Under the pieces are notes generated by a model, which was not told where the DNA came from, made no database searches, and saw only the letters and a program-made list of their open reading frames with translations. The translations under genes were made by a program, and so were the position numbers. DNA of 64,000 bases from Ranitomeya imitator (taxonomy: Eukaryota). Each line of letters begins with the position of its first letter. Position 1 is the stretch's first letter. Location: positions 476,284,001-476,348,000 of the forward strand of contig NC_091282.1 in NCBI RefSeq assembly GCF_032444005.1, read 5' to 3'. This document shows positions 5,200 through 50,940 of this stretch, piece by piece.

Positions 5200-5886
5200 T
5201 GAGATGTGTGTATGAGCTGGTGTGTTTGTGTGTGATATCTATAGTGTGTGTGTGTGTGATATCTGTAGTGTGTGTGTGTGATATCTGTAGTGTGTGTGTG
5301 TCTGACATCTGTAGTGTGTGTGTGTGTGTGATATCTGTAGGGTGTGTGTGTGATATCTGTAGTGCGTGTGTTATATATGTAGTGTGTGTGTGAGATCTGT
5401 AGTGTGTGTGTGTGTGTGTGATATCTGTAGTGCGTGTGTTATATATGTAGTGTGTGTGACATCTGTAGTGTGTGTGTGATATCTGTAGTGTGTGTGATAT
5501 CTGTAGTGTGTGTGATATCTGTAGTGTGTATGTGTGTGTGATATCTGTAGTGTGTGTGTGTGTGATATCTGAAGTGTGTGTGTGTGTGATATCTGTAGTG
5601 TGTGTGTGATATCTGTAGGGTGGGTGTGTGATATCTGTAGTGCGTGTGTTATATATGTAGTGTGTGTGTGAGATCTGTAGTGTGTGTGTGTGTGTGTGTG
5701 ATATCTGTAGTGCGTGTGTTATATATGTAGTGTGTGTGACATCTGTAGTGTGTGTGTGATATCTGTAGTGTGTGTGATATCTGTAGTGTGTGTGATATCT
5801 GTAGTGTGTATGTGTGTGTGATATCTGTAGTGTGTGTGTGTGTGATATCTGAAGTGTGTGAGTGTGTGATATCTGTAGTGTGTGTG
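5200..5886. repeat. (TG)n-gatatctgta compound minisatellite
   Basis: Repeating gtgtgtgtgatatctgta units with variable TG runs. Source of spurious ORF 4916-6055. Confidence 0.9.
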
Positions 5887-7199: not shown

Positions 7200-7900
7200 A
7201 CACTATGAGGGGGGCTGCATTATATTCTATGGGGGTTACATTGTATTGTATGGCAGGGCTGCAGTATACTCTGTGGGGTGGCTGTATTATACTATATGTG
7301 GGCTGCATTATACTGAATCGAGGACTATGGGGAATATATTATACTATATGAAGAACTATGGTCCATTATACTATGGGAAGTGAATTGTACAACATGGATG
7401 ACGATGGCGGTGCATTATACTATATGGAGCACTATGAGGAGTGTATTATACTATATGGAGGACTGAGCAGTGTATTTTAATATATGGAGTACTATGTGGA
7501 GTGTATAATACTAAATGGAGGACTGAAGAGTGTATTATACTATATGGAGGACTATGAGGAGTGTATTATACTGTATGGAGGACTGAGCAGTGTAATTTAA
7601 TATATGGAGGACTATGTGGAGTGTATAATACTAAATGGAGGACTGAGGAGTGTATTATACTATATGGAGGACTATGAGGGGTGTATTATACTATATGGAG
7701 GACTGAGCAGTGTATTATACTATATGGAGCACTACGAAGAGTGTATTATGCTATATGGAGCACTATGAGGAGTGTATTTTAATATACGGAGGAGTGTATT
7801 ATACTATATGTAGGACTGAGGAGTGTACAATACTATATGGGGGACTATGGGGAGTGTATTATACTATAAGGAGTACTATGGGGGTGCATTATACTTCTCA
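7200..7900. repeat. ~30-bp minisatellite (gagtgtattatactatatggaggactatgag-like)
   Basis: Visible tandem units inside the hAT-like element. Confidence 0.8.
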
Positions 7901-10340
7901 TATGGATCCCCATGACTTCTATGTTAGCCCCTGATGAGTATAATGGTTTATTTTCTTTTATACATTACATAACAATGGCATTACGGGGGACAAATATATG
8001 CCAGGATGGGGCACTGGATAGTTATGCAACTGAGGTCACACTATACAACTTTGCAATAAAGCTATAGTGTGCAAAATTAATAGGGAAAATGTGAATTTGG
8101 GTGGAAAATATTTTGGCATGGTGGGGGGGCCCCATTTGAAAGTTTGCATCGGGGCCCATAACTTTGTAGTTACGCCACTGCATACAGGGTGATGTCCCCA
8201 GAGCCCTGCTATACACAGTATGTCCTCACAGCCCCCTATAGACAGTATGTTGTCTCCACAGTCCCTCTATATACAGTATAGCTTCACAACTCCCTTGTGA
8301 ACAGAACAACAGCCCCACAGCTCCTTATAAATAGTATAAGTCCACAGTTCCCTATATACCGTATGAAAGCACCACAGTCCCCTATGTACAGATTGATGGT
8401 CCCACAGCTCCCTACATAAATATGATTGCTCCAAAGCTCCCTATCTACAGTATGATGGACCCACAATTGCTGTGTGGCTCGTCTTCAGTCTGGTCGTTTT
8501 CTGGAGAGGCTCCTCAGTAGGTACAGGCAGCGTCAGGTGAGTTGCGTGACGTCATTCAGCAGATGCGGCTATGCACAGCATTTTGTGTGGCCGCACCTGC
8601 TAGGAGAGCTAGAAGCAGCCACAAACTTTCTACTACAAGTTCTCCTGACAAGTTATACTTGAAAGTCAAAGCAACAAAAAGATCTTGCTCCACCGAAACA
8701 ATAGAGAATACATTCAGCTGCACACAAAAAAATATATATTTCTAATTTTCAAAGAGAAAGACATGCATTGATCTGCACATTGCTTATACTGCGGCTTCTT
8801 TGATAACATTTATTGTTGCATGTTATTATTAGTGTCGCCTCATTTTTCTTTTTTTAATGCGGATATCGCTATATACACCTCTTTATAGCTCATAAAGGTT
8901 TTCCTGAAATGTTAACCTTATGGTATGCATTGATTGTTTTTCCACATTACCTTATGCACTTGCATTTCTTACAGCATCTACTGTTAGCCATTTTATTATT
9001 GGTGTTTGGCATCTATTTTCTTGTTCATCACGTCTCCATAAATACCTAATACTTTACGAGTACCTTCACGACCACAGCTAGCGCAGTTCTGAATGACCCA
9101 GATAGTCTGCATGCGCAGTATTGAAGTCTCGATGCATGCGTACTATTAATGATTGTGACGTGAGAGCATCCCCCAATTCTGGACACTGAGCAGCTTGGAT
9201 ATAGTATGTTCATGTACAATACGGCCCTGGCTAAATCCATACTCCTGGTAACTATAGTTTTTTGATGATCATACTATTTAAGGCACACATACCCCTGGTG
9301 TTTTTGTATTAATAAAAGTGTTATTTGAAAAACTTTCACCATTTTGTAAGAATTTCTTTGTCTTGGAGAATTATGTAGTTATGCTGTAAAGAGGCCGCTG
9401 TACTCTTACAAACAATATGGTGCCTTCAGAAGACAATTGGTGAAGGTGCCAAGAGTCACAACCAACTAGAGAGTGGTGGCTTATCCTAATGATAGGCTAT
9501 CAATAGTCTGATCTTGGAAACCCACTTTTTAATTACCTTTGACAGAAGAGATCAATGTAGGGACTTAAGTACCAATATAATGGCGATGAGTAAGGGTACC
9601 GTCACACAGTACAATTTTGATCGCTACGACGGCACGATTCGTGACGTTCGAGCGATATAGTTACGATATCGCAGTGTGTGACACGCTCCTGCGATCAGGG
9701 ACCCCGCTGTGAATCGTACGTCGTAGCACATCGTTTGAAACTTTCTTTCGTCGTCTAGTGTCCCGCTGTGGCGGCATGATCGCATGGTGTAACAAAGGTG
9801 TGCACGATATTGTATACGATGTAAAGGGCGGAGGAGCTGGCTACGTAGGAGCGCAAAATTCTCCACCTCCCGTGTGCTGATTGGGCGGTACAATACTGTG
9901 CGCTCATTCAACAGACAAAGGACTATTGTTCCAAGCGGATAAAACCGGAGCTGTCGAGCGCTCTATTCATTTCTCTCTGTAGCACGTGCTGGATACAGAA
10001 CTCCTAAATTCGCTGGATTCCCTGTACTTTTATAACTACTACAACTACAGACTTTTACCGCAAAAGGTATGCATAACGCTACAGCGTAGCAGATGTTGCG
10101 CTTCAACGGGGATAAACGCTGGAGCGTGGTCGATTGTTCCTTTATGGAGAGTAGGGTAGGCCAGAGAACCTCAGGTACACAGCTGTAGCGTGGCCCAATT
10201 AATTAATCCTTTTACAGATCGAGATGGTTGACTGCCCCATTTAATACCAGTAGTAACATATATAGTTATTAGATCAATGGTCAGAACATTGTTTTGTAAG
10301 CACGTGTATTTATTGTACATTTGTTTTATTTTTAGGAACT

Positions 10341-12083
10341 ATGCTCACTTCCGATGAGAGTTCTGTTGTTGCTGCTGCCCTGGTGTTTGAGGCAGCACGT
10401 CTCCAAGAAGAGAGACGTCCTAAACGAAAACGTCGCATGTGGACCCGGAGCTGGCTGCAGAAAAGATCCACATTGTCACACATGGGTCTCATAAGAGAGT
10501 TACATGACAATAACCCTCATGATTTCCGAAACTACCTTCGGATGTCCGAGGAATCCTTCAAAATAATACTGTCTGCTGTTACGCCACTCATACAAAGGCG
10601 TGATACGCCGATGCGTGCAGCCGTGCCCGTGGATGAAAGGTTGGCGGTGACACTGCGGTTCCTGGCAACAGGAAGGTCTCTTCAGGATTTGCAGTTTTCC
10701 GCAGCTGTTTCCAGACCTTTCCTGAGCGTTGTGATTCCGGAGACATGCGAGGCCATTGTGCACAGCTTAAGGCATTATATGGAGGTACTACTATATTATT
10801 TTGGCTGTTGTGTTATGTCGATATATTATACTAGCTATTTAACCCGTTCTACGCCCTGGTTGCGCGCATTTCTATTGGTATATGTTCTACATCCTATCAT
10901 GTGCTGCTCCCATCCTGCGCCCCCATTCTGACATGTGCTGCTGCGATCCTGCGCCATCCTGCGCCTCCATTCTGACATGTGCTGCTCCCATTTTGCGGCT
11001 CCATTCTGACATGTGCTGCTCCAATCCTGCGCCACCCTTCTTTTATTTGCTGCTCCCAACGTAATTTAATAGGTTATATTATTTTAATATATTGTTTTGC
11101 ACCCCCTCTCAGTCAGTGAAGCCGTCTGATAAAATGGCTGCCTGCATATTCTGGATTGTTGACTATAACTTTGTTATACTAATCAAAACTGTGCGTCAAT
11201 CACTCTAGGATGTCCACATGAGAGTGTATGTGCACAACAATATATTTGACCTAATTTGTACATGTTTCCTTCTCATCTTGCAGTTTCCCAAGACGGCGGA
11301 GGACTGGAAGAAGATTGCTTCCGATTTTGATCAGCTGTGGCAGTTTCCAAACTGCGGTGGTGCATTAGATGGAAAGCATGTGCGCATCACGCAACCAGCC
11401 AACTCTGGATCCTTTTTTTTCAACTACAAAGGATATTTCAGTGTGATCCTCATGGCCCTTGTCAATGCGAACTATGAGTTCGTCGATGTGGATGTTGGCA
11501 TGAATGGTCGAGTCTCCGACGGTGGAGTTTTTGAACACACTTCATTTGGGGAAAGCTTAAGGAACAATCAACTGCAGTTGCCAGTAAATGAAGACACAAA
11601 AGCAAACCTCAATTTTGTTTTCATCGCAGACGAAGCTTTCCCTCTTCATCCACATTTGCTGAAGCCATTTGCACAGAGAACACTCACACCGGAGCGCCGA
11701 ATCTATAATTACCGGTTGTCGAGGCCCGTCGTGTGGTTGAAAATGCCTTTGGGATTATGGCTAATCGGTTTAGAGTGTTCCACACAGCTATCAACTTGAA
11801 GCTGCCGTCTATAGACTTTGTGGTTTTGGCATGCTGTGTGCTCCATAATTTCCTGAGACATCATGATACGAGCTCCTATTCTCCTCCTTCGTTTATTGAT
11901 GCAGTGGACCCAAGAACCGGAGATATTGTGCCCGGGGAATGGCGTACACAACCTGATAATTTAACAGCTCTTCAAGCACTTGGATCTGGCAGACAGGCAG
12001 ACGATGCAAGGGACTGTCGAGAAAAATACTGTTAGTACTTTAATGGTTCTGGAGCTGTACCCTGGCAGGATCGCGCCGTATAA
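10341..12083 (+). pseudogene. Harbinger (HARBI1-like, DDE_Tnp_4) transposase, two coding exons, one frameshift and one late stop
   Basis: Exon 10341-10784 (GAG|GTACTA), intron 10785-11283 (ttccttctcatcttgcag), exon 11284-12083. Motifs: ERLAVTLRFLATG (HTH), GALDGKH, FIADEAFP, RVVENAFG. A 1-bp loss at ~11722-11725 (agg[g]cccgtcgt) and TAG at 12033-12035, 16 codons before the natural TAA. About 414 aa if repaired. Confidence 0.9.
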
Positions 12084-12538: not shown

Positions 12539-14235
12539 TTATCTTCTTCCACGGCCCAACAGGTGTCGCAGCATCACGCCCTGCTGCTCAACTTGAGCCT
12601 GGAGGAGCGCTGCTGTCTGCTGCAGGAGCGCTGCTGTACGCTCCAGGCGCAGTTGTCTGGCCAGGAGCTCTCTCACGGTGGGCGGTTCTGTGGATAGAAG
12701 AGGTTGGAGAACTGATGGTGATTCCGCTGAAAATACCTATCGACCTCTGTTGCTGGACCAAATTGAGTGTGTTGTAAATTTCTATTTGGTCCGGGCACAC
12801 AGGGCTTTTTTTTTTTTAAATTAAATTTTACAGTTTTTGTTGTCAATTGTGACATTCCACCGAGATATCCACTCGTATTATCTTAATACTTACGGAGAAG
12901 GGATGCCGGTTCTTCATTGCCAGAACCAGTACTGCTTATTTCCCATCCATGACATCTGGCCACTGCTGCTAAAAGGAAATAATAACAGATCTGTTTAACT
13001 ATGGAACACGCCGTTGCAAAGCGCTCGCTGTTTTTGTCACTTACGTATGGTAGCTTCTGGGGAGAAGGCCGCCGACCCGGGGGAGGAAAATGAGGGCCGG
13101 AAGGGAGGTGTTGAGGGTGGTGTTGGGGTGCGAGGCCGCATGGTCAATAAACATGTTGAGGTCCCGGGCTCTGGGCTGCCGCTGGTGGCGGATGAAGGAG
13201 AGCTTGTCTCAATGAGAGGTGCCTGTTGCCGGCGCCTTCTCTCTACACATAAATGAAACAAACAAAATGTTTAGACATTTCTATACTGTATGTTGTAAAC
13301 CAAGTGCAGAGCAAAGGGAATCATTTAAACCAATACGGTTCCTGCTTTAATTAGTCCTAAAATTCAAAGGGAATGAACGCTGTGTTCTGATCGTGTTTTG
13401 CAGCAGCATTTGGAGAAGTTGTAACAGAGAAGCTTGTCTTTTATATGTGTAGTACTGTGTGTGCTCCATATTGTGTGTTCCGTACGATGTGTACGTGGTA
13501 CTGTGTGTGGCACGGTGTGTACGTCGTTGTGTGTGCGGCGCTGTGTGTGCTCCGTATTATGTGCGACACGGTGTGTATGCCGCAGTACTAGAAGAGCATC
13601 ACGGCTGTGCGCGTCTACTGATTAGCTGCCATTATTTCTCCTCCGGGCACTGTGCGCGCAGGATAATGTATACAATATGTACGCTACACTGTTATGTCAC
13701 CTATGCTATAATTACATTTCTATGAGTGATGGTACACTTACGTGAGGTCCTGGGCTGTGGCCTGCTGCTGTTGGTGGATGAAGGAGAACTGGCAGCAATG
13801 GCAGGTCTGTGTTGCTGTCGCCTTCTCTCTACAGATAAATGAAAGAAAAGCAATGTTTTAAAAACAAAGAACAGGGATTCCAGAGCCCCCCCCCAAAAAA
13901 AAATAGCCCGCAGGCCTACCTCCTCATAAAAGCGTGCATCGCCCAATTCCCCCATACTGGTACTTGCCTCGCCTTGTCTCCGCACGCAACTCAGCAAGAA
14001 GGTGTGGATTTTTGTGTCGGAGGTCGGCCCATTTCTTACGCAACTGCTGCGCACTCCGGCGGACGCCAAACCTCCTATCCAGCATTTGGACAATGCGACG
14101 CAGCACCTCCTGCTTATGTTGGTTCGGGTGTGCTGGGAGAGTCTTCTGGCACTCATAATCAAGTGCATCCATGCGATGTACCAAAAACCGGAGCTCGGTG
14201 TGCCCCAAAGGGGCAGATCTCTGTCTTCCAGCCAT
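12539..14235 (-). CDS. Harbinger accessory gene 1: Myb/SANT-like DNA-binding + C-terminal coiled coil, 5 exons, 258 aa, apparently intact
   Basis: Exons 14235-13968 (GC donor GAG|GCAAGT), 13828-13742, 13242-13045, 12968-12894 and 12687-12539. All introns are phase 1 and the frame is open from MAGRQRS to LLGRGRR*. N-terminus contains ELRFLV...RSAQQLRKKWADLR; last exon reads VRELLARQLRLERTAALLQQTAALLQAQVEQQ. Confidence 0.8.
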
Positions 14236-14520
14236 TACAGATAAAAAGACGCTATAAAGCAGCACCTAACCACACCCAGAGGAAGTCCTTAACTGTGCAG
14301 TTCTCCCGCGCGATCCGCATCGCTATAGCGTTGCCGTTTATGGACAGCGTCACATTTGTGACGGCTGAGCGCTACAGAAGGAACGCACATAGTAAATGAC
14401 GTTCGAACGATGAAGATATAACGCCGGTGCGGCACGTAATGTGCGCTCGTGGTATATGACGGCGTGATGACGTTACAGCGTTCCTGCGCTACCTTGCTTT
14501 GCTTCCCTGACATCCTTAAA

Positions 14521-17500
14521 ATGGCTGCCAGGCGACGTGATCCTCCTATGGGTGTCCCAGAGCTAAAGTTCATGATTACCACTATGGATCAGATGCAGTA
14601 TGAAACCACAGGGCTGGTGCTGCACCGCAACCAGCACAAGGATGAAGTCGTACGTGTGGTGTCTGAGGGCCTCAGGAAGCAGTTTGGGATAACAAGAAGT
14701 AAGGCCCAGATTGTGAAGAAATGGGGAGATCTTAAATCAAAAAGCCCAGCGCGCCTGCAGGAGCTTCGCCGTGAGATCCGCAGTGGTGAGTACGCAGGTA
14801 CCCAAAAGTATTGCACGGCGAAGGGTTAATTGGGTGTGTATGTGGTGTGTATGTGGCCCTGCTATGGTGCAATAATGAAAGGAGCAGAGCACTATGTGGC
14901 CCTGCTATGGTGCAATAATGAATGGTGCAGAGCACTATGTGGCCCTGCTATGGTGCAAAAATGAACGGTGCAGAGCACTATGTGGCCCTGCTACGGTGCA
15001 ATAATGAATGGTGCCGAGCACTATGTGGCCCTGCTATGGTGCAATAATGAACGGTGCAGAGCAGTATGTGGCCCTGCTGTGGTGCAATAATGAATGGTGC
15101 CGAGCACTATGTGGCCCTGCTGTGTTGCAACAATGAAAGGTGCAGAGCACTATGTGGCCCTGCTATGGTGCAATAATGAATGGTGCAGAGCACTATGTGG
15201 CCCTGCTATGGTGCAACAATGAAAGGTGCAGAGCACTATGTGGCCCTGCTATGGTGCAATAATGAATGGTGCAGAGCACTATGTGGCCCTGCTATGGTGC
15301 AATAATGAAAGGTGCAGAGCACTATGTGGCCCTGCTGTGTTGCAACAATGAAAGGTGCAGAGCACTATGTGGCCCTGCTATGGTGCAATAATGAATGGTG
15401 CAGAGCACTATGTGGCCCTGCTGTGGTGCAATAATGAATGGTGCCGAGCACTATGTGGCCCTGCTGTGTTGCAACAATGAAAGGTGCAGAGCACTATGTG
15501 GCCCTGCTATGGTGCAATAATGAATGGTGCAGAGCACTATGTGGCCCTGCTATGGTGCAACAATGAAAGGTGCAGAGCACTATGTGGCCCTGCTATGGTG
15601 CAATAATGAATGGTGCAGAGCACTATGTGGCCCTGCTATGGTGCAATAATGAAAGGTGCAGAGCACTATGTGGCCCTGCTGTGTTGCAACAATGAAAGGT
15701 GCAGAGCACTATGTGGCCCTGCTATGGTGCAATAATGAATGGTGCAGAGCACTATGTGGCCCTGCTGTGGTGCAATAATGAATGGTGCAGAGCACTATGT
15801 GGCCCTGCTGTGTTGCAACAATGAAAGGTGCAGAGCACTATGTGGCCCTGCTATGGTGCAATAATGAATGGTGCAGAGCACTATGTGGCCCTGCTATGGT
15901 GCAACAATGAAAGGTGCAGAGCACTATGTGGCCCTGCTATGGTAAAATATCACTGTTGCCATATCTGCTGATCGAACGTTATTTTTTCCTTCACAGACGC
16001 AAAGACACACCGACGCCGCCACGAGGCATCCCACACCGCCTCAGATATCGCTGTGCCCTCCGGGTCAACGGCTCAACAACCCAGTAGGTTCACCCAATAA
16101 TGTGATTAGGATTTGTTGTAAGGTCCCCTCTACCCCCCCTCCACCTGCAGTCACTGTTGCCATTTATGTAAAAAAAATTTTTTTATTTTTTCCCCTCACA
16201 GAGGCAACGACACAGCGCTGCAGCCACGAGGCTTCCCACCCCGCCTCAGATGTCCGTGCGCCCTCTGGGTCAACGGCTCAACAACCCAGTAGGTTCACCC
16301 AATAATGTGATTAGGATTTGTTGTAAGGTCCCCTCTCCCCCCCCCCACCTGCAGTCACTGTTGCCATTTATGTAAAAAAAAATTTTTTTATGTAAAAAAT
16401 TTTTTTTTATTTTTTCCCTTCACAGAGGCAAAGACACAGCGCCGCCGTCGAGTTTACCAGGCCTTTGACACGGACTCTGATCCAGAGTTGCCCTCCGTGC
16501 CTACAGATCCTAGTAGGTTCCCACAATAATGTGATTAGGTTTTGGTGGCAGGTCCCCTCTTCCCCCCCCCCCCCACCTGCAGTGACTGTTGCCATTTATG
16601 TAAAAAAAATTTTTTTTTCCCTCACAGAGGCAACGACACAGCGCCGCAGCCACGAGGCTTCCCACCCCGCCTCACATGTCCGTGCGCCCTCTGGGTCAAC
16701 GGCTCAACAACCCAGTAGGTTCCCACAATAATGTGTTCCGGATTTGGTGGCAGGTCCCCTTCCCCCCCCCCACAACTGCAGTCACTGTTGGCATTTATGT
16801 TAAAAAAAAAAAAAATGTTTCCCTTCACAGAGGCAAAGACCAAGCGCCGCAGCCATGAGGCTTCCCACCCCGCCTCACATGTCCGTGCGCCCTCTGGGTC
16901 AACGGCTGAACAACCTAGTAGGTTCCCACAATAATGTGTTCAGGATTTGGTGGCAGGTCCCCTCTTCCCCCCCCCCCCCACAACTGCAGTCAATGTTGGC
17001 ATTTATGTTAAAAAAAAAAAATTTTTTCCCTTCACAGAGGCAAAGACACAGCGCCGCAGCCACGAGGCTTCCCACCCCGCCTCACATGTCCGTGCGCCCT
17101 CTGGGTCAACGGCTGAACAACCTAGTAGGTTCCCACAATAATGTGTTGAGGATTTGGTGGCAGGTCCCCTCTCCCCCCCCCCCCCACAACTGCAGTCACT
17201 GTTGGCATTTATGTAAAAAAAAAAAAAAAAAAAAAAAAAATTTCCCTTCACAGAGGCAAAGACAGCGCCGCAGCCACGAGGCTTCCCACCCCGCCTCACA
17301 TGTCCGTGCGCCCTCTGGGTCAACGGCTGAACAACCTAGTAGGTTCCCACAATAATGTGATTAGAAATTGGTGGCAGGTCCCCTCTTCCCCCCCCCCTCA
17401 ACTGCAGTCACTGTTGCCATTTATGTTAAATATTTTTTTGTTTTTTTCCCTTCACAGAGGCAAAGAAACAGCGCAGCCACCCCGAGGCATCCCAGTCACC

Positions 17501-17908
17501 GCAGTACTGGCCCCCTGATGCTCTTCCGGAGAATATGACCCCAGACGAGGTCTTGCCACGTAAGTTTTTCCAACTCGCTTAAGATTGTCACTCACTGCAT
17601 CTCTCTATGTAACCCTGTACATCAAGGGCCGTTTCAGAGCCTTCCGCCGCCTCAGATGTTTCATTCATCCTTTACGCTATTATGGGGAAGTGATCACAGC
17701 CCACTATCTGGATAATACTGTGGTATTAATGTTATGTTTTTATGCTTTCTCAACAACAGCAGCCGGCAGTGTGACCATCGTAGATGTTAAAGCCAGGATT
17801 GAAAGGCTGTGCGTGACTCTGGCGCAGATTCAGGAGCAGCAGAATCTGGCAATCGGAGAGTTGATTAAGATTAAAGACATGTGCCAACTGTTGGAGGCGG
17901 GACAATAA
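14521..17908 (+). CDS. Harbinger accessory gene 2: Myb/SANT-like + tandem 87-nt cassette exons + coiled coil
   Basis: Exon 1 is 14521-14785 (G|GTGAGT). Cassette exons are 15997-16083, 16202-16288, 16426-16512, 16628-16714, 16831-16917, 17038-17124 and 17254-17338 (85 nt, frameshifted). Then 17458-17559 and last exon 17760-17908. 345 aa if the 85-nt copy is skipped. Confidence 0.75.
14851..15943. repeat. 43-bp minisatellite, ~25 copies, in intron 1 of accessory gene 2
   Basis: Unit gcagagcactatgtggccctgctatggtgcaataatgaatggt. The variant pattern repeats at a 344-bp (8-unit) offset, e.g. 15121 vs 15465. Confidence 0.95.
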
Positions 17909-18157
17909 TACATATTAATACCGGGTTAAAAATTTTTTTGTTGTTACATTAAAAAAATTTAGTTAAACTATGATTCATTTTTTTTGTATTAGTTAAATGT
18001 ACATGACTTTGTTACGTTAATTTGTGCCCTCATACAGTGCTGTGATCGAGACACACCAATCAAACAGTCGTGATAGAATTTCAAAGAAAAGCTTTTATTT
18101 AACACATTATGTTAACAAGACAATAAAAAAAAAAGTAATGTAAAATAAGTTAGGAAA

Positions 18158-18402
18158 TCACAAATCGTGATACGCCGATTCTTCCGGCTGATAACTTGGG
18201 TGCCTGATGGGCGAAGCCATATGTGAAGGTATTGGCGTGTAGGAGTTAGGGGGTGGCTGGCCGAAGTGGGAAACGGGAACATTGTGTCGCATTGGTGTCT
18301 GACACTGTGACCAACCATTATAATATGAGGGCTCTGTCCGCTGCATTGGCCGGGAAGAGACCAAACGAGTGTGCTCGTCCAAATTGCCATCTGTACCCTT
18401 GT
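18158..18402 (-). pseudogene. Orphan 3' fragment of the MADF gene left by internal duplication
   Basis: Nine differences in ~250 nt versus 19978-20237. It reads ...EHTRLVSSRPMQRTEPSYY...EESAYHDL* and is cut at 18402, where sequence homologous to 14433 resumes. Confidence 0.85.
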
Positions 18403-18498
18403 CACGTAATGTACGCTCGTGGTCTATGACGGCGTGATGACGTTACAGCGTTCCGGCGTGCCTGCGCTAGCTTGCTTTGGTTCCCTGACATCTTGATA

Positions 18499-19763
18499 AT
18501 GGCTGCCAGTCGCCGTGATCCTCCTATGGGCATCCCAGAGCTCAAGTTCCTTATTGGAACAATGGATCGGATGCAGTACGAGACAACTGGGCTGGTGCTG
18601 CACCGCAACCAGCACAAGGATGAAGTTGTCCGTGTGGTGTCTGAGGGCCTCAGGAAGCGGTTTGGGATAACTCGCAGCAAGGCCCAGATTGTGAAAAAAT
18701 GGGGCGATCTCAAGTCCAAAAGCCCAGAGCGCCTGCAGGAGCTTCGCAAGGAGATTCGCAGAGGTCAGTACGCAGGTACCCAAAAGTATGTGGCACAGCT
18801 ATGGGGCAGTTTGAACGTTGCAGAGCCACTATGTGCCACAGCTATGGGGCAGTATAAACGTTGCAGAGCCACTATGTGCCACAGCTTGAACGTTGCAGAG
18901 CCACTATGTGGCACAGATATGGGACAGTTTGAACGTTGCAGAGCCACTATGTGCCACAGCTATGGGGCAGTATGAACGTTGCAGAGCCACTATGCGGCAC
19001 AGCTATGGGACAGTTTGAACGTTGCAGAGCCACTATGTGCCACAGCTATGGGACAGTATGAACGGTGAAAAGTACTATGTGGCACAGCTAACTGCAGACC
19101 TACCTTTTTTTTTTCCTTCACAGAGGCAAAGACACAGCACCACCGCCGCCACGAGGCATCCCGCACAGCCTCTTCTGGATCTGTGCCCTCTGGGTCAACT
19201 CCTCCAGATCCTAGTAGGTTCCCACAATTATGTGATTTGGATTCAGTTGCAGGTCCCCTCTTCCCCCCCCCTCCCCCGGCAGCCAGTGTTGCCATATATG
19301 CTAACAGACCTTTTTTTTTTTTTTTCCCTTCACAGAGGCAAAGAGACAGCGCCGCCGCCGACAGCACGAGGCATTCAACATGGACTCTGATCCCGAAGTG
19401 CCCTCCGTGCTTCAACATCCTAGTAGGTTCCCACAATAAAGTTATTTTGATTTTGTGGCAGGCCCACTCTTTCACCCCCAACCCAAACACCACCCCCCCC
19501 CCCAAGTCAGTATTGCCTTATATGCTGACTGTTTTTTTTTCTTTTTTCCTTCACAGAAGCAAAGACACATCGGGAGACTACAGAGTTATTAATGTTATGT
19601 TTTTTGACCCACAGCTGTCGTCAGTGTGAACAAGGAGGATCTTGAAGCCGGCATAGAAAGGCTTATCCACACTATGGCGCGGATTCAGGAGCAGCACAAT
19701 GTGGCAATGGAGGAGCTGCAGAAGCTTTGGGACATGTGCCAGCAGTTGGAGGCGGGCCAATAA
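18499..19763 (+). CDS. Harbinger accessory gene 3: paralog of gene 2, 4 exons, 196 aa
   Basis: Exons 18499-18763 (G|GTCAGT), 19124-19213, 19336-19422 and 19615-19763, all phase 1 and in frame. A vestigial cassette start lies at 19557. Confidence 0.75.
18786..19090. repeat. 43-bp minisatellite, ~7 copies, homologous to 14851-15943
   Basis: Unit gcagagccactatgtgccacagctatggggcagtatgaacgtt. It aligns to the gene-2 intron unit with compensating 1-bp indels. Confidence 0.85.
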
Positions 19764-19992
19764 TACATTTTTGGTTGTTACATTAAAAATATTTAGTTAA
19801 ACTATGATTCCATTTTTTTTGTATTAGTTAACTGTACATGAATTTGTTACGTTAATTTGTGCCCTCATACAGTGCTGTGATCGAGACACACCAATCAAAC
19901 AGTCGTGATAGAATTTCTAATAAAAGCTTTTATTTGAAACATTATTTTAACAAGACAATAAAATAAAAAGTAATGTAAAAGAAGTTAGGAAA

Positions 19993-20902
19993 TCACAAAT
20001 TGTGATACGACGATTCTTCCGGCTGATAACTTTGGTGCCTGATGGGCGAAGCCATATGTGAAGGTATTGGCGTGTAGGAGTTAGGGGGTGGCTGGACGAA
20101 GTGGGAAACGGGAACATTGTGTTGCATTGGTGTCTGACACTGTGACCAACCATTGTAATATGAGGGCTCTGTCCGCTGCATTGGCCGGGAATAGACCAAA
20201 CGAGTGTGCTTGTCCAAATCGCCATCTGTACCCTTGTTTACTGCTTCCAATATTAGACGCTCCGCTAGTGTTCTTTGGCTGTCGTCCATTTTGGCCAGTT
20301 TGTCAACAACATAGTGTCCAAACCCCTGCAACGCAGGGCTAACATTGTTTGTTAACACCTTTTTTGCAAGGCTCAACAGTTCATGTGAAACGTTTGAGGT
20401 GGCTTTCCGTTTCCTTGGACCTTGCCTCGATTGAGTCCTGGCAGGTGCCGCCTCCACTAAATCTGTTGTCGTGCAGTCCTGTGAACAGTCCAGTGTACTG
20501 TCCTGCGCACTGTCATCCTGGGGGAAAAAAAAAAAAAACAAGTTACGAACCTGGCAACAAAAAGTTTGACCACCATAACCGCATCCAAACTATATATTCG
20601 TAGTAGGTAAAAAAAGGTTGTAATATATTTTAAGCTTAGTAATATTCTTTAACCTTCCCATTTATTTAATACTTTTAACTACACTGTTCTGACTGCTAGG
20701 GGAACCTGATTAATATTTTATAGTCTAAATAGTCTCAACAAGAGTACATCGGCAGCTTGAAGCGATACTATTTTCTATAGTGGCACGGTGGCACGGTGGC
20801 GCAGTGGTTAGCACAGCAGCCTTGCAGCGCTGGAGTCCTGGGTTCAAACCCCACCAAGGACAACATCTGCAAAGAGTTTGTATGTTCTCTCCGTGTTTGC
20901 GT

Positions 20903-20933
<31 letters not shown>

Positions 20934-21694
20934 ACATTCCAAAGACATACTGATAGGGAATTTAGATTGTGAGCCCCATCGGGGACAGCAATGATAATGT
21001 GTGCAAAATGTAAAGCGCTGCGGAATATGTTAGCGCTATATAAAAATAAAGATTATTATTATATTGCTTAGATGGTATGGTTTAGAAATATCGCCATTTC
21101 ATACATATTATGTTCCCCATATAATACTTTACTGCGACAGGGTTACTTATGTGGACATGTTTTTGTAATAACTTCAAACTGATGTGATAATCAGAAGTAT
21201 AAAACATAAAATGCAGAGAAAAATTATGTAATTATAGGACACATTGGTGAACTTTCGTCCAAAGAGCTACTTACTTGTTGCCCTTGTGACTCCTGCTCGG
21301 CGTGGTTCTCCGAAACAATTTGTTCCACAGGTGCCAACAAGCGAAAACACGTGGAAGTCCGTGGCACCTCTTGGTCCCTCAGAAAATTCAGATGTTCAAA
21401 ATACCAAAGCTTTGGCACATAAACATCTTCGGTGGAAGCCCCGGACTTTGTAGTGTGAAGAACCTTGTTAAGCTCCTTCCTCCACACCGTGCGGAGCGCC
21501 TGAATTTTCTTTTTAATAACCGCTTTGTTTGCTGGCTCTTCTGGTGCATGACGATTGTAAAGCTCAATGAGCTTTAAATAACCCTCCTGCCTCTTTTCCC
21601 TGTTACAATACTCTGGAGATTTGATTTTCCAGAGGCAGGGAAAAGACTGGTATATTTCGATGAATTCCCTGATGAATTCCACACGATTTGACAT
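19993..21694 (-). CDS. Harbinger accessory gene 4: MADF-domain protein with BESS-like C-terminal motif, 2 coding exons, 314 aa
   Basis: Exon 21694-21275 (FIEIYQSFPCLWKIKSPEYCNREKRQEGY...KKKIQALRTVWRKEL...YVPKLWYFEHLNFL; CAA|GTAAGT) and exon 20517-19993 (after poly-T cccccag; FGHYVVDKLAKMDDSQRTLAERLILEAV). Phase 0, frame open. Confidence 0.85.
20782..21062 (+). mobile_element. tRNA-derived V-SINE in the MADF gene intron
   Basis: A box ggtggcgcagtggttagc, B box gggttcaaaccc, V-domain gagtttgtatgttctctccgtgtttgcgtgggtttcctccgggcactccggtttcctcccacattccaaagacat, and an (ATT)n tail. Confidence 0.85.
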
Positions 21695-21819: not shown

Positions 21820-22490
21820 ATTGTTCCATCTGCCACGCCATAGGCCACCATAACCCAAAACAGTGTACCGCCTGCTTCACTACAGCAGCCACACAAATCG
21901 CTCATGGTGACCATACATTGTACCATCTGCCACGCTGTAGCTCACCAGACACAACCAGTCACAACAGCGTACCATCCGCATCGCTTCAGCGGCGGAACGA
22001 AGCGGTCATGCCGACCAAACAGCGTTCCATCTACCACGCTCTAGCCCACCAGTCACAACCAGTCACAACAGCGTACCATCCACATCGCTTCAGCGGCGGA
22101 ACGAAGCGGTCATGCCGACCAAACAGCGTTCCATCTACCACGCTCTAGCCCACCAGTCACAACCAGTCACAACAGCGTAACATCCGCATCGCTTGTTTCA
22201 TCTGCCACACCATAGGCCACCATAACCCAGAACAGTGTACCGCCCGCTTCCATACAGCAGCCACACAAAGCGCTCATGGTGACCATACATTGTACCATCT
22301 GCCATGCTGTAGCTCACCAGACACAACCAGTCACAACAGCGTACCATCCGCATCGCTTCAGCGGCGGAACGAAGCGGTCATGCAGACCAAACAGCGTTCC
22401 ATCTACCACGCTCTAGCCCACCAGTCACAACCAGTCACAACAGCGTACCATCCGCATCGCTTCAGCGACGGAACGAAGCGCTCATGACGA
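21820..22490. repeat. Nested direct repeats in the right subterminal region of the Harbinger element
   Basis: A ~370-bp duplication (21821 vs ~22194) containing ~100-bp units cagcgtaccatccgcatcgcttcagcggcggaacgaagcgg...cagtcacaaccagtcacaa. Confidence 0.85.
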
Positions 22491-25000
22491 CAGTACATCG
22501 TTCCATCCACTATGCCCAAGCGGTGTAACATACCTCGAAGCTGCGGTGCAAAGCGTGGAATATTCTGTGAAATACTGAATCCGATGTCCTAGTCCAACAA
22601 GTGTCCAAGTACAAAGTGAAGAAAGGAAATTTTGAAACCGGTGAGGTGGCTTGGAAACAATAGCGCTCAGGTGACAAATTTTCCAACCAATTGTGTGCAC
22701 AGAACCTGTGGCCTATCAGCACATAGCTAGCAGCTCGACACGCCCCCTAGTGAACAACGTCACGCACAGATTATGCAAAATTTGCTCTGAATCGTCTTGT
22801 GTGACACGACCGTACGACTGTCCCATACGACTTCTACATCGCAAATATGTCATGAAATTATCGCTCCAGCGCCGTACATCGTGAAGTGTGACCGCAGTGG
22901 AGCGATAATTAAGCGACGATGTAACGTCACAAATCGTGCCGTCGTAGCGATCAAAATTGCACTGTGTGACGGTACCCTAAGTAAGAAACAAGTCAGATGT
23001 TCTACTAGTCTGTGGACCTGTTACCACAGCTAGATGGTGGATATCTTCAGGAGAAATCAGTGGGCAAGTTGACCGACTGCCAGCACATAAGTATAATCTA
23101 TACTAATACTTTCCACTAATACAACTCTAAATGGCTTCATTCCAAGATGGGGCACATCTGAATGCAGGCATGCTGACTATGGCCATAATGTCCACGTCAC
23201 TTTCCCAAAGAATTATATAAAAGCTAGAATACCTCAGCATTTGGCAGACATGCCGTTACTGTAACACCTCAGCATGCGATTATCTGTCCCTCCCTTTGTA
23301 TTACAGCTCGTTCCTGAAATGCTCTGCTTCCTCTAGCCCCAGTGAGGAACTATCCCTGCCTTGCCCACTCCTTTTCCTGATATACACCCAACTGGTGATC
23401 AATCTCATCTTACCTCACAGCATCCACGCCTAGCAGGCATCTTGCCAATTCAACCCGTCTCTTGACTTTTTGCTGAACACACATTATGGCAGGGCCGAGC
23501 TTCACACATGTAAAAAGGCAAAAAGATTTAATTCACTATACTACAAATGCTTTATGCCTGGAAATCTACACTCACAAGGGCACTTCAATCTCTGCTGATC
23601 CACTGCAGTGAGCTCACACCCGGAGCATATAGCAGTATTGTAGACGAACCTCTGCAGCATTTTAGTCTTTGGGGCCTATCATCAAGACTGGCATAGCGTA
23701 CGTTCATACTATGCGAGTCTTCCCAGCATGCAAGGCACTGAATTCATTAAGAGGAACATGCTCATCTTCTTGGTGGCCTGCATTGCACCAGAAATGGCTA
23801 CTCCAGGCAGGGATTGCAGAAGCATTTCTGGCATCCATAACGTCAGCATTATTGATGAATTTGAAGAGCGGTTGTGTCCACGCCCTTGTCCCGCCATGGT
23901 TCCACCAATTTTAGCTGATTCCAACACTAAGTCGCAAAATTTTTGTGCAACACACCAAAAATGTTGCGACCTTTTACAGATTGATAACTTAGCCCCTATG
24001 TTTCATGGATGGATAAAAAATGTTACTAGAAAATCTTGCAATAGTTTTTTTTCCGTCAGTTTATTAAAATATTAATTCAGTTATTGTTGACTAATGACAA
24101 TACCATTAGTAACCAAATTGATTAAATCTAGAATTCACTATTCATTGATAAAATGTATCCTATATTACTCTCTTGCTACACTTCCATTTCAGGAGTCTGT
24201 AAAACCTAAGTGAAAACTCTGTGATATTGATATATTGAACCAGTGGAGAGCTTGTACTAACTCAAGGTATGGCTCAGTGACTAGCACTAGGGTCCTGGGT
24301 TTAAATCCCACCAAGAACATCATCTGCAAGTAGTGTGCATCACGCGTTGCAACCTTTTATCAATTTTTTTCCATTGAGATTAGCTAGTGTCAAGGGTTGT
24401 AAACTTCTTGATTAGAATGTGCACCCATTGACAAAGGAACATCAAGTTCTCTGGAGATGGACATGTAACCCTGAGATTGTTGATATTTTTCAACAATTTT
24501 AGTCCTCAGACAGTTCCCTTTTCCGCTTAAGGTTCTCCCTGGTTAGTGTGGCACACACAGACACAATATGCAAACATTGAGTCAACTTCCCCTCTTTCTA
24601 TCGGTTTTCAGGTTTGATTTTCATATTGCTCAGACCTGTTACTTGCCATAGATGAGATTGGAGATTGAATGAGCATCACATGCTTAAAACAAAGTTGGGA
24701 AATGTGCCAATAACTTTGTCCTGGTCCATTTTGGGTTTTTTGTGTGAAATGATGTCCAATTTGCCCTTTTTTTAAATTTTTTTAATTTTATTTTTTTACA
24801 ATCTGTGTATAACAAAACATGTGTGATTGCAATCATCTTCTGGGAGAAATACTTCCTTTTCTGGCACAATTTCAAGGGCGACAACACTTTCGGCCATAAC
24901 TGAATTATTCAAAATTCACAGTTTCAAAACTTTTATGCCATTTACCACACTCCTTTTTAACCACCAGACCCCTGACAGAGACATCTAGAATAAGAGCAGA

Positions 25001-38879: not shown

Positions 38880-40120
38880 AAGCAGGCACAGTGGCTCATC
38901 CACACGGATCCTACCGGCCCAGCCACACGGATCCTACTGGCCCATCCACACGGATCCTACTGGCCCATCCACACGGATCCTACTGGCCCATCCACACGGA
39001 TCCTACTGGCCCATCCACACGGATCCTACTGGCCCATCCACACGGATCCTACTGGCCCATCCACACAGATCTTAGTGTCCCATCAGTGTTTATGCAGGCA
39101 CAATGGTTCGTCCACACGGATCCTACTGGCCCATCCACACAGATCCTACTGGCCCATTAGGGTTTAGGCAGGCACAGTGGTTCATCAACACGGATCCTAG
39201 TGGCCCATCCACACGGATCCTACTGGCCCATCCACACGGATCCTAGTGGCCCATCCACGTGGATCCTACTGGCCCATTAGTGTTAATGCTGGCACAGTGG
39301 TTCATCCACACAGGTCCTACTGGCCAATACAAACGGATCCTACTGCCCCATCCACATGGATCCCACTCGCCCATCCACACGGATCCTACTGGCCCATCCA
39401 CACGGATGCTACTGGCCCATCCACATGGATCCCACTCGCCCATCCACACGGATCCTACTGGCCCATCCACACGGATCCTACTGGCCCATCCACATCGATC
39501 CCACTCGCCCATCCACACGGATCCTACTGGCCCATCCACATGGATCCCACTCGCCCATCCACACGGATCCTACTGGCCCATCCACACGGATGCTACTGGC
39601 CCATCCACATGGATCCCACTCGCCCATCCACACGGATCCTACTGGCCCATCCACACGGATCCTACTGGCCCATCCACATCGATCCCACTCGCCCATCCAC
39701 ACGGATCCTACTGGCCCATCCACATGGATCCCACTCGCCCATCCACACGGATCCTACTGGCCCATCCACACGGATCCTACTGGCCCATCCACATGGATCC
39801 CACTCGCCCATCCACACGGATCCTACTGGCCCATCCACATGGATCCCACTCGCCCATCCACACGGATCCTACTGGCCCATCCACACGGATCCTACTGGCC
39901 CATCCACACGGATCCTACTGGCCCATCCACACAGATCTTAGTGGCCCATAAGTGTTTATGCAGGCACAGTGGTTCATCCACACAGATCCTACTGGCTCAT
40001 CCACACAGATCCTACCAGGCCATCAGTGTTTATGCAGGTACAGTGGTTCATCCACACGGATCCTACTGGCCCATTAGAGTTTATGCAGGCACAGAGGTCA
40101 TCCACATGGATCCTACTGCT
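38880..40120. repeat. 23-bp minisatellite (cccatccacacggatcctactgg), ~50 units with variant units
   Basis: Intronic tandem array with the variant cccatccacatggatcccactcg interspersed. Source of the long HTDPTGPSTRILLAHPHGSYWPI ORFs. Confidence 0.95.
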
Positions 40121-50379: not shown

Positions 50380-50940
50380 ACCAGATAGTCCCCAATATAG
50401 TATAATGCACCAGATAGTCCTCAATATAGTATAATGCACTCCCCATAGGCCTACTCTATATTGCATAATGCACCCCCATAGGCAGACTCTATAGCACAAG
50501 GCAGCACCCATAGGCAGACCCTGTAGTAAAAGGTGGGACCACGCAGGCAGACCCTGTAGTATAAAGCAGCACCCCTATAGGCAGACCCTGTAGTATAAGG
50601 TAGCACCCCTATAGGCAGACCGTGTACTGTAAGACAGCCCCCCCTAGGCAGACCCTGTAGTATAAGGCAGACCCCCATAGGCAGACCCTGTAGTATAAAG
50701 AAGACCCCCCATAGGCAGACACTGTAGTATAAGGCAGACCCCCCATAGGCAGTCCCTGTAGCATTAGGCAGACCCCCCCATAGGCAGACCCTATAGTATT
50801 AGGCAGACCCCCCGTAGGCAGACCCTGTAGTATTAGGTAGACCCCCCATAGGCAGACCCTGTAGTATTAGGCAGAGCCTGTAGTATAAGACAGTACTCCC
50901 CCCATAGGCAGATTCTGTAGTATAAGGCAGCACCCCTTAA
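50380..50940. repeat. ~33-bp minisatellite (ggcagaccctgtagtataaggcagacccccata-like)
   Basis: Visible tandem units. Confidence 0.8.

What the first reader, a model, noticed from the sequence alone, without database searches (positions are those of the whole stretch)
15961..17560. Tandem array of symmetric 87-nt cassette exons forming a tunable linker
Seen: a ~205-225-bp intron+exon unit is repeated eight times. Each has ttcacag|ag gca aag... and, for the first seven, ...a|GTAGGT. The exons are phase 1-1, so any subset keeps the frame. They encode basic Arg-rich starts plus Ser/Pro-rich tails (e.g. AKTQRRSHEASHPASHVRAPSGSTAEQP), and one is an acidic variant (RRRRVYQAFDTDSDPELP). Copy 7 has a 2-nt deletion. 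Gene 3 has only two such exons. The introns vary in poly-C and poly-A run length. Inference: combinatorial splicing or copy-number change tunes the spacing between the Myb domain and coiled coil, or the number of NLS-like motifs.
Basis: partly seen in the sequence, partly recalled or inferred. Interest (0 to 1): 0.75.

Follow-up and report, generated by a model that had tools for sequence, protein, structure and literature searches.

The report
Repeated exon array in frog transposon gene
A helper gene carried by a Harbinger jumping gene of the poison frog Ranitomeya imitator has multiplied one small exon plus its intron eight times; the copies are spliced into a floppy spacer between its DNA-binding head and its pairing helix, and nothing shows that the spacer length is tuned for a purpose.

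Summary
Window 15997-17559 holds eight head-to-tail exon+intron units of 202-224 bp. Six exons are 87 nt, one is 85 nt (2-nt deletion, in-frame stop) and the last is 102 nt. All have YTCACAG acceptors and phase 1-1; seven have A|GTAGGT donors.

The array lies in a Myb/SANT-like accessory gene of a 13.4-kb PIF/Harbinger element with 56-nt TIRs, a TAA target duplication, a DDE_Tnp_4 transposase and a MADF gene. NCBI protein XP_069617890.1 (P0002, R. imitator) is this locus's product; it uses units 1, 3, 4, 5, 6 and 8 and skips 2 and the broken 7.

Contigs of four runs (guessed to be RNA) carry GT..AG joints at the predicted borders. Unit number varies among family copies, from 2 to 8. Two annotated isoforms of one R. 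variabilis locus differ by exactly one 29-residue cassette.

The "tuning" reading is not supported. The cassettes evolve about as fast as their introns (dN/dS about 0.66, against 0.14 for the Myb exon). AlphaFold2 predicts them disordered. The young units mostly lack NLS-like motifs, and this copy also has a frameshifted transposase.

Best reading: a minisatellite-like expansion of a symmetric exon, tolerated in a disordered linker. The same scan noted this stretch before on this DNA.

The parts
9593..9648 (.). Left terminal inverted repeat of the Harbinger element, preceded by the target duplication TAA
   Evidence: 56-nt arms, 96% complementary to 22923-22978. TAA flanks both ends.
14467..14785 (+). 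First coding exon of gene 2: Myb/SANT-like three-helix head. A second in-frame ATG lies at 14521. Donor is G|GTGAGT, phase 1.
   Evidence: 100% tblastn match to P0002 residues 1-106. Pfam Myb_DNA-bind_4 is below cut-off at E 0.007. AlphaFold2 helices at 30-47, 54-73 and 79-91. dN/dS 0.14 against gene 3.
14850..15943 (.). 43-bp minisatellite (25 copies) filling intron 1, just upstream of the array
   Evidence: TRF: 93% matches, score 1901.
15997..16083 (+). Unit exon E1, 87 nt, basic type; used in P0002
   Evidence: A joint leaves 16083.
16202..16288 (+). Unit exon E2, 87 nt, basic type; intact but absent from the NCBI model
16426..16512 (+). Unit exon E3, 87 nt, acidic variant with RRRR; used in P0002
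   Evidence: GT..AG joint 16512>16628 in three runs.
16628..16714 (+). Unit exon E4, 87 nt; used in P0002
16831..16917 (+). Unit exon E5, 87 nt; used in P0002
17038..17124 (+). Unit exon E6, 87 nt; used in P0002
   Evidence: GT..AG joint 17124>17458, with 80 letters on the shorter side.
17254..17338 (+). Unit exon E7, 85 nt: the 2-nt deletion shifts the frame into a stop inside the exon. Absent from P0002.
17458..17559 (+). Unit exon E8, 102 nt, diverged tail type (QYWPPDALP...DEVLP); donor C|GTAAGT
   Evidence: Joint 17559>17760 in two runs. One contig matches E8 with 0 mismatches.
17760..17908 (+). Last exon of gene 2: 40-residue amphipathic heptad helix, a likely coiled coil; stop at 17906-17908
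   Evidence: 100% match to P0002 287-334. pLDDT 88-97. Heptad a/d positions read IVILLIQALICL.
19124..19213 (+). Gene 3, basic unit exon, 90 nt
   Evidence: Joint 19213>19336 in all four runs.
19336..19422 (+). Gene 3, acidic unit exon, 87 nt
   Evidence: Joint 19422>19615 in three runs.
19615..19763 (+). Gene 3, last (coiled-coil) exon
   Evidence: Joint at 19615. 74% DNA identity to gene 2's last exon.
22923..22978 (.). Right terminal inverted repeat, followed by TAA

Best explanation
The stretch is a minisatellite-like tandem expansion whose ~207-bp unit happens to hold one complete exon and its intron. It lies in the linker-coding part of an accessory Myb/SANT-like gene carried by a 13.4-kb PIF/Harbinger DNA transposon of Ranitomeya imitator.

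Shown here:
- The array, its splice sites and its phases are as described.
- The host gene sits between the element's transposase and MADF genes.
- Spliced transcripts with the predicted junctions exist.
- NCBI's model for this locus joins six of the eight units.
- Unit number differs among copies of the family.
- The Myb exon is under purifying selection while the cassettes are barely constrained.

Inferred:
- An older triplication gave a basic, an acidic and a tail-type exon.
- Later, unequal recombination or replication slippage between the near-identical introns, with their poly-C and poly-A runs, added basic units on both sides of the acidic one.
- These gains were tolerated for two reasons. 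The exon is symmetric (phase 1-1, length a multiple of 3), so any number of copies keeps the frame. The encoded 29 residues also form an intrinsically disordered, basic, Ser/Pro/His-rich spacer between the DNA-binding head and the C-terminal coiled-coil helix, where length and sequence matter little.
- Unit 7 is already broken and must be skipped for a full-length product. If it is included, the mRNA carries a premature stop.

So the linker length is variable, but there is no sign that the variation is selected.
For: Array and borders.

Element: TIRs and TAA duplication, DDE_Tnp_4, MADF gene and transposase as neighbours of P0002.

Locus identity: P0002's gene span is 3442 bp, equal to 14467-17908. 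Neighbour offsets match, and the first and last exons are 100% identical.

Splicing: GT..AG joints 16512>16628, 17124>17458, 17559>17760, 19213>19336 and 19422>19615.

Mosaic units: E2 is 98% like E4, but I2 is 98% like I1. E3 is 65% like E2, but I3 is 90% like I2.

Weak constraint: in young units exons are 93-99% and introns 95-96% identical. Cassette dN/dS is 0.66-0.67, against 0.14 for the Myb exon.

Disorder and helix: (residues 111-268 have pLDDT below 50 and no secondary structure).

Variable unit number.

Family architecture: more distant relatives keep head, variable low-complexity linker and terminal helix. One of them (P0016/P0018) has its own unrelated linker repeats.

Signs of decay in this copy: the DDE_Tnp_4 profile is split over two frames, and E7 is broken.
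Against: - The first half of the basic cassette (AKTQRRRHEASHTAS) is well kept between lineages and between two species. Some constraint therefore exists.
- Introns inside gene 2 are more alike than exons of different types. This could mean exon types are kept by selection while introns are homogenised.
- The dN/dS values rest on about 36 substitutions and are not significantly below 1 or different from it.
- I could not obtain DNA of the other copies. Unit counts there come from gene models that may skip units.
- The runs are only guessed to be RNA.
Confidence: 0.62

Rival explanations
1. Adaptive tunable linker. Cassette number, set by copy-number change and by alternative splicing, is selected. 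It would adjust the reach between the DNA-binding head and the coiled coil, or the number of basic import motifs, of a Harbinger accessory protein.
For: - Symmetric exons with intact splice sites in all eight units.
- Cassette donors (A|GTAGGT) match the consensus less well than the flanking donors (GTGAGT, GTAAGT). This is typical of skipped exons (read from the sequence; general knowledge).
- Isoforms X3 and X4 of one R. variabilis locus differ by one cassette.
- Harbinger Myb-like proteins are reported to import the transposase and bind the element's ends (PMC9392472).
- E1 and E3 carry RRRH and RRRR.
Against: - Cassettes diverge like introns, and dN/dS is 0.66-1.4.
- Of the recently added units, only the E4/E5 junction scores an NLS-like pattern; E4 and E6 have none.
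- The largest array sits in a copy with a frameshifted transposase and a broken unit.
- No locus-specific evidence of regulated splicing.
Confidence: 0.12
2. Dead-copy decay. This element copy is a fossil. The array, the 43-bp minisatellite and the internal gene duplication are neutral rearrangements of a pseudogene, and its spliced transcripts are noise with no protein role.
For: - Transposase frameshift.
- E7 frameshift.
- Gene 3 has lost its E8-type exon.
- The duplication junction at 18402/18403 is absent from other copies' contigs (loose ends).
- Within the array, dN/dS is about 1.
Against: - The Myb exon shows dN/dS 0.14 over dS 0.47.
- A 334-aa open model exists.
- All splice sites are intact.
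- One contig matches E8 with no mismatch and is spliced to the last exon.
- The architecture is shared by relatives.
Confidence: 0.23
3. Assembly artefact. The number of units is an error of assembling a repeat.
For: Tandem repeats with homopolymer runs are error-prone. No reads of the source individual were laid here.
Against: - Units differ by 2-35% and each has diagnostic variants.
- The public annotation on the same assembly spans the same 3442 bp.
- RNA contigs match unit-specific junctions.
Confidence: 0.03

Closest known systems
PEVK exons of titin
   Same: Many short, repetitive exons arose by tandem duplication. They encode a disordered segment and are alternatively spliced, so segment length varies. 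Slippage and recombination are invoked for exon gain and loss (PMC6469411).
   Different: Titin is a host gene whose spring length has a measured mechanical role and regulated splicing. Here there are 8 units in a transposon-borne gene, no known regulator, no shown effect of length, and near-neutral sequence change.
Myb-like (trihelix) accessory protein of PIF/Harbinger transposons, and its domesticated relative NAIF1
   Same: A second gene of the element encodes a three-helix Myb/SANT-like protein. That protein is reported to import the transposase and bind the element's ends (PMC9392472). Here the gene lies inside a Harbinger with TIRs, a TAA duplication and a DDE_Tnp_4 transposase.
   Different: This element also carries a MADF gene and three Myb/SANT-like genes. 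Gene 2's head only reaches sub-threshold Pfam scores. No described Harbinger accessory gene that I know of (my own knowledge, not a search result) has a tandem exon array. DNA binding and import were not tested.
Tandem exon duplication in animal genes, including Patthy's phase 1-1 rule for shuffled modules
   Same: A whole exon plus intron is duplicated in place. Only symmetric exons can multiply without breaking the frame. Duplicates often become alternative exons (general knowledge; papers listed).
   Different: Most described cases are one duplicate pair used in a mutually exclusive way. Here it is an eight-unit array with additive inclusion.
Coding VNTRs built of exon+intron units, such as LPA kringle IV-2
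   Same: Copy number of an exon-bearing tandem unit differs between copies or alleles and changes protein length (my own knowledge).
   Different: The LPA unit is 5.5 kb with two exons encoding a folded domain. Here the unit is 0.2 kb encoding a disordered peptide. Allelic polymorphism was not tested.

Membership tests
PIF/Harbinger DNA transposon | DDE_Tnp_4 (Harbinger-type) transposase | tested here: met
   Pfam PF13359, E 4e-18 and 2e-6 on two ORFs. It is frameshifted in this copy.
PIF/Harbinger DNA transposon | Terminal inverted repeats and a 3-bp TAA/TTA target duplication | tested here: met
   56-nt TIRs, 96% complementary. TAA on both sides.
PIF/Harbinger DNA transposon | Second gene for a Myb/SANT-like DNA-binding protein | tested here: met
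   Gene 1 (13924-14265, minus strand) passes the Myb_DNA-bind_5 cut-off, 23.4 against 21.7 bits. A MADF gene is a neighbour.
Myb/SANT-like (trihelix) domain, for gene 2's head | Significant match to a Myb/SANT-like profile or fold | tested here: inconclusive
   Myb_DNA-bind_4 scores E 0.007, below cut-off. P0002 has no family at E 0.01. The head is 47% identical to gene 1's head, E 5e-19. Relatives P0007-P0015 score 19-22 bits. Foldseek finds nothing significant; the best-fitting small targets are the GT-1 and Zeste trihelix domains, TM 0.51-0.55.
Cassette (alternatively included) exons | Canonical splice sites and symmetric phase | tested here: met
Cassette (alternatively included) exons | Spliced in RNA at the predicted borders | tested here: met
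   GT..AG joints in four runs from three studies. The runs are only guessed to be RNA. The NCBI model agrees.
Cassette (alternatively included) exons | Both inclusion and skipping from the same locus | tested here: inconclusive
   At this locus, the joints 16083>16628 and 17124>17458 and the model's skipping of E2 and E7 could all come from paralogues or from the gene caller's choice. At R. variabilis LOC143807995, isoforms X3 and X4 differ by one cassette.
Classical nuclear localisation signal | Run of four basic residues, or P followed by three of four basic residues (PSORT-type patterns, recalled from memory) | tested here: inconclusive
   Hits in E1 (RRRH), E3 (RRRR), the E4/E5 junction (PKAKTKR) and the E8 junction (PKAKKQR); none in E4 or E6. 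Import was not tested.
Coiled coil (C-terminal exon) | Long helix with hydrophobic a/d heptad positions | tested here: met
   Helix 292-331, pLDDT 88-97. 92% hydrophobic a/d positions in one register. Oligomerisation was not tested.
Minisatellite / VNTR | Head-to-tail units whose number varies | tested here: met
   TRF. 2 to 8 units among paralogous copies. Allelic variation was not tested.

The most novel reading that the evidence does not exclude
The exon array is a selected, fast-evolving valency and length module of a transposon accessory protein. By gaining or losing units, and by skipping them in splicing, the element changes how far its DNA-binding head can reach from the coiled-coil dimer and how many basic motifs it shows. 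That would tune end synapsis or transposase import, perhaps in conflict with host repression. It would be the first splicing-adjustable spacer described in a DNA transposon.
Probability: 0.1. Interest if true: 0.65.

Novelty: new variant of a known kind. Interest (0 to 1): 0.38.

Why it matters
Tandem exon duplication is a textbook route to longer, repetitive proteins. It is known from host genes such as titin. Here the same process is caught young, with its intermediates side by side: intact units, one broken unit, and sister copies with 2 to 4 units. It occurs inside a gene carried by a DNA transposon.

This shows that transposon accessory genes with introns can grow by exon-unit slippage. 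It also gives a natural series of linker lengths for testing how Harbinger helper proteins work.

There is a practical warning too. Automatic annotation names the product "serine/arginine repetitive matrix protein 2-like", and paralogues "anion exchange protein 3-like". Both names are misleading for transposon genes.

Tried and rejected
- **DNA of paralogous loci.** The look-up of encoding contigs returned gene spans but no DNA for P0001, P0003 and P0004, and had no record of P0005. Units per copy could therefore only be counted from protein models.
- **Earlier findings.** Searches by sequence and by words for other arrays were blank.
- **Unit elsewhere in the window.** blastn finds the unit only in genes 2 and 3. 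It is not a dispersed repeat here.
- **Pfam on P0002.** No family at E 0.01.
- **Foldseek against PDB.** Nothing significant, because most of the model is disordered.
- **Big profile-free search.** Only 29 hits at E below 1e-3 among 1.84 billion representatives. Two of them (P0014, P0031) are unrelated repeat proteins.
- **Open frames as evidence of coding.** Rejected, because a second frame is also open in seven of the eight exons.
- **Skipping joints as proof of alternative splicing at this locus.** Rejected, because the E1>E4 contig has 4 mismatches in 93 nt and so comes from a paralogue.
- **Joined spliced protein.** I did not build or search one. Exons were searched by reference, and the full-length sequence used is the database protein the search returned.
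Full report
**1. The observation**

Tandem Repeats Finder reports a 207-bp period over 15979-17494. It has 7.3 copies and 75% matches overall, rising to 87-89% for the last five units.

A motif scan places eight acceptors (YTCACAG|A) and eight donors at regular spacing:

| Exon | Coordinates | Length |
|---|---|---|
| E1 | 15997-16083 | 87 nt |
| E2 | 16202-16288 | 87 nt |
| E3 | 16426-16512 | 87 nt |
| E4 | 16628-16714 | 87 nt |
| E5 | 16831-16917 | 87 nt |
| E6 | 17038-17124 | 87 nt |
| E7 | 17254-17338 | 85 nt |
| E8 | 17458-17559 | 102 nt |

- The introns are 115-137 nt.
- E7 lacks 2 nt near its start and runs into a stop inside the exon.
- Every possible junction between these exons yields an ordinary codon, never a stop (read from the sequence).
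- Gene 3 has a 90-nt basic and an 87-nt acidic unit, plus an acceptor remnant.

There are two small corrections:
- The acceptor-side motif is not literal in E1, E2 and E4.
- A second frame is also open in seven of the eight exons, so openness by itself is weak evidence.

**2. Where it lies**

The window is Ranitomeya imitator. The first exon ORF found an R. variabilis relative. Using that protein's head as query returned P0002, NCBI XP_069617890.1, "serine/arginine repetitive matrix protein 2-like" from R. imitator.

P0002 is the product of this very locus:
- It matches 14467-14784 and 17762-17905 at 100%.
- Its gene spans 3442 bp, exactly 14467-17908.
- Its annotated neighbours are a DDE_Tnp_4 gene and a MADF gene on the other strand. 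Both sit at offsets that fit window 10611-11799 and 19993-21694.

The whole set lies inside a 13.4-kb element:
- It has 56-nt inverted ends (9593-9648 and 22923-22978, 96% complementary).
- It is flanked by TAA on both sides.
- It has a Harbinger-type transposase.

It is therefore a PIF/Harbinger transposon. Earlier notes of this scan describe such multi-gene Harbingers in this genome. I confirmed the ends, transposase and MADF neighbour for this copy.

**3. The protein**

P0002 reads as follows: Myb/SANT-like head, then E1, E3, E4, E5, E6 and E8, then the last exon. It omits the intact E2 and the broken E7.

AlphaFold2, run on a shallow alignment, gives three regions:
- Head helices at 30-47, 54-73 and 79-91, plus 94-116, with pLDDT 60-83.
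- No secondary structure and pLDDT below 50 over residues 111-268, which are the cassettes.
- A confident 40-residue helix at 292-331.

In one heptad register the a/d positions of that helix read IVILLIQALICL. The "linker between a DNA-binding head and a coiled coil" picture is thus supported by prediction.

The head's assignment to Myb/SANT is only indirect:
- Pfam scores are below cut-off.
- It is 47% identical to the neighbouring gene 1, which passes the Myb_DNA-bind_5 cut-off.
- Fold matches to GT-1 and Zeste trihelix domains are weak.

More distant relatives keep the same plan of head, low-complexity linker of very different length, and terminal amphipathic helix. One of them has its own unrelated linker repeats.

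**4. Are the units spliced?**

I laid contigs of four runs from three studies on 14400-19800. The runs are guessed to be RNA, and the organism is coded.

GT..AG joints fall exactly on predicted borders:
- 16512>16628 (E3 to E4; three runs)
- 17124>17458 (E6 to E8, passing E7; 80 letters on the shorter side)
- 17559>17760 (E8 to the last exon; two runs)
- 19213>19336 (all four runs) and 19422>19615, both in gene 3

The E6>E8 and E8>last-exon joints in run X1 have the same depth, 48.2, so I infer one contig. By depth arithmetic that contig carries this locus's letters at 17797, 17811 and 17814. A contig of X2 matches E8 without mismatch.

The family is therefore transcribed and spliced as predicted.

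Limits:
- The contigs are short, and near-identical units collapse.
- Likeness was set at 90%, and several contigs clearly come from paralogues. The E1>E4 contig, for example, has 4 mismatches in 93 nt.
- Exon skipping at this one locus is therefore not proven.

Independent support for cassette behaviour comes from R. variabilis LOC143807995. Its isoforms X3 (P0005) and X4 (P0006) are identical except for one 29-residue unit. The junction residue changes from T to A, as a phase-1 junction predicts.

**5. Copy number among copies**

| Copy | Units |
|---|---|
| Gene 3 | basic + acidic |
| P0005 | basic + tail type |
| P0003 | two basic + acidic + tail type |
| P0004 | basic + acidic + basic + tail type; nearly identical to gene 2's E1, E3, E4 and E8, but on another chromosome |
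| Gene 2 | two basic + acidic + four basic (one broken) + tail type |

The counts for P0003-P0005 come from gene models. No DNA could be fetched for those loci.

The cassette plus coiled-coil part was found only in these Ranitomeya proteins among 1.84 billion representatives.

**6. Selected or neutral?**

- Among the young units, exons are 93-99% and introns 95-96% identical.
- Between genes 2 and 3, cassette exons are 77-79% and introns 74-83% identical, while the Myb exon is 87% identical.
- Nei-Gojobori estimates between genes 2 and 3:

| Region | dN/dS |
|---|---|
| Myb exon | 0.14 (dS 0.47) |
| Two cassette pairs | 0.66 and 0.67 |
| Last exon | 0.74 |
| Within the array | 0.2-1.4, from very few changes |

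The head is thus clearly constrained, and the cassettes are barely so.

Units are mosaics. E2 resembles E4, but I2 resembles I1. E3 is only 65% like E2, while their introns are 90% alike. This is what unequal crossing-over or conversion between units produces.

NLS-like patterns occur in E1, E3, the E4/E5 junction and the E8 junction, but not in E4 or E6. The recent growth therefore did not consistently add such motifs.

This copy also has a transposase whose DDE profile is split between two frames by a 1-nt shift.

**7. Verdict**

The array is real, is made of genuine spliced symmetric exons, and makes linker length variable among copies.

The best explanation is slippage or unequal-recombination growth of an exon-bearing minisatellite, tolerated in a disordered spacer (about 0.6).

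An adaptive "tuning" device remains possible but is unsupported (about 0.1). Pure decay of a dead copy is the main rival (about 0.2).

The closest analogue in mechanism is the PEVK exon array of titin (PMC6469411). The closest family is the Harbinger Myb-like accessory protein (PMC9392472). It is a new variant of known kinds and of moderate interest.

Noticed in passing
window 14850-15943 and 18787-19090: Intron 1 of gene 2 is filled by a 43-bp minisatellite of 25 copies. Gene 3 has 7 copies of a diverged version. Contigs pile up on it: summed word depth reaches 11536 in one run, so the 43-mer is abundant in the runs.
   Followed up: partly
window 11720-11800: The transposase is frameshifted. 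DDE_Tnp_4 profile positions 1-116 are in one frame (ORF ending 11799) and 119-158 in another (ORF from 11733). The sequence reads aggcccgtcgtg where one more base would restore ...SRARRVVENAFG. This copy is probably non-autonomous, unless it is a homopolymer error.
   Followed up: partly
window 14433-18402 versus 18403-20237: An internal tandem duplication has a sharp junction at 18402/18403. Contigs from other copies run on from 18402 into letters identical to 20238 onward, so the usual element lacks the duplication. Divergence is discordant: Myb exon 87%, last exon 74%, 3' flank 95.5%.
   Followed up: partly
R. variabilis LOC143807995 (P0005, P0006): A nucleolin-like acidic/basic N-terminus is joined to a cassette, the tail-type exon and the coiled-coil exon of this transposon gene. 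This could be a chimeric transcript, exon capture or an early domestication.
   Followed up: no
R. variabilis P0001; window 12545-13237 (minus strand): P0001 has a head 96% like gene 3's and a tail like gene 1's. The paralogous Myb/SANT genes therefore exchange parts between copies or species.
   Followed up: no
window 18499-19763: Gene 3 has spliced joints in all four runs, but no gene is called there in the public annotation (no entry between P0002 and the MADF gene).
   Followed up: partly
window 21902-22507: Two blocks of 104-bp tandem repeats (2.8 and 2.3 copies) lie just inside the right end of the element. They are candidate subterminal binding sites for the accessory proteins.
   Followed up: no
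window 38892-39949, 50470-50874, 5220-5886, 7370-7895: Further minisatellites (23-bp x45, 34-bp x12, GT-rich 20-bp, 31-bp) show how repeat-prone this genome region is.
   Followed up: no
P0016 / P0018 (distant relatives): Another member of the wider Myb-linker-helix family carries its own tandem acidic linker repeats (EEEEDGGQADHPPQT). Linker expansion has therefore happened more than once.
   Followed up: no
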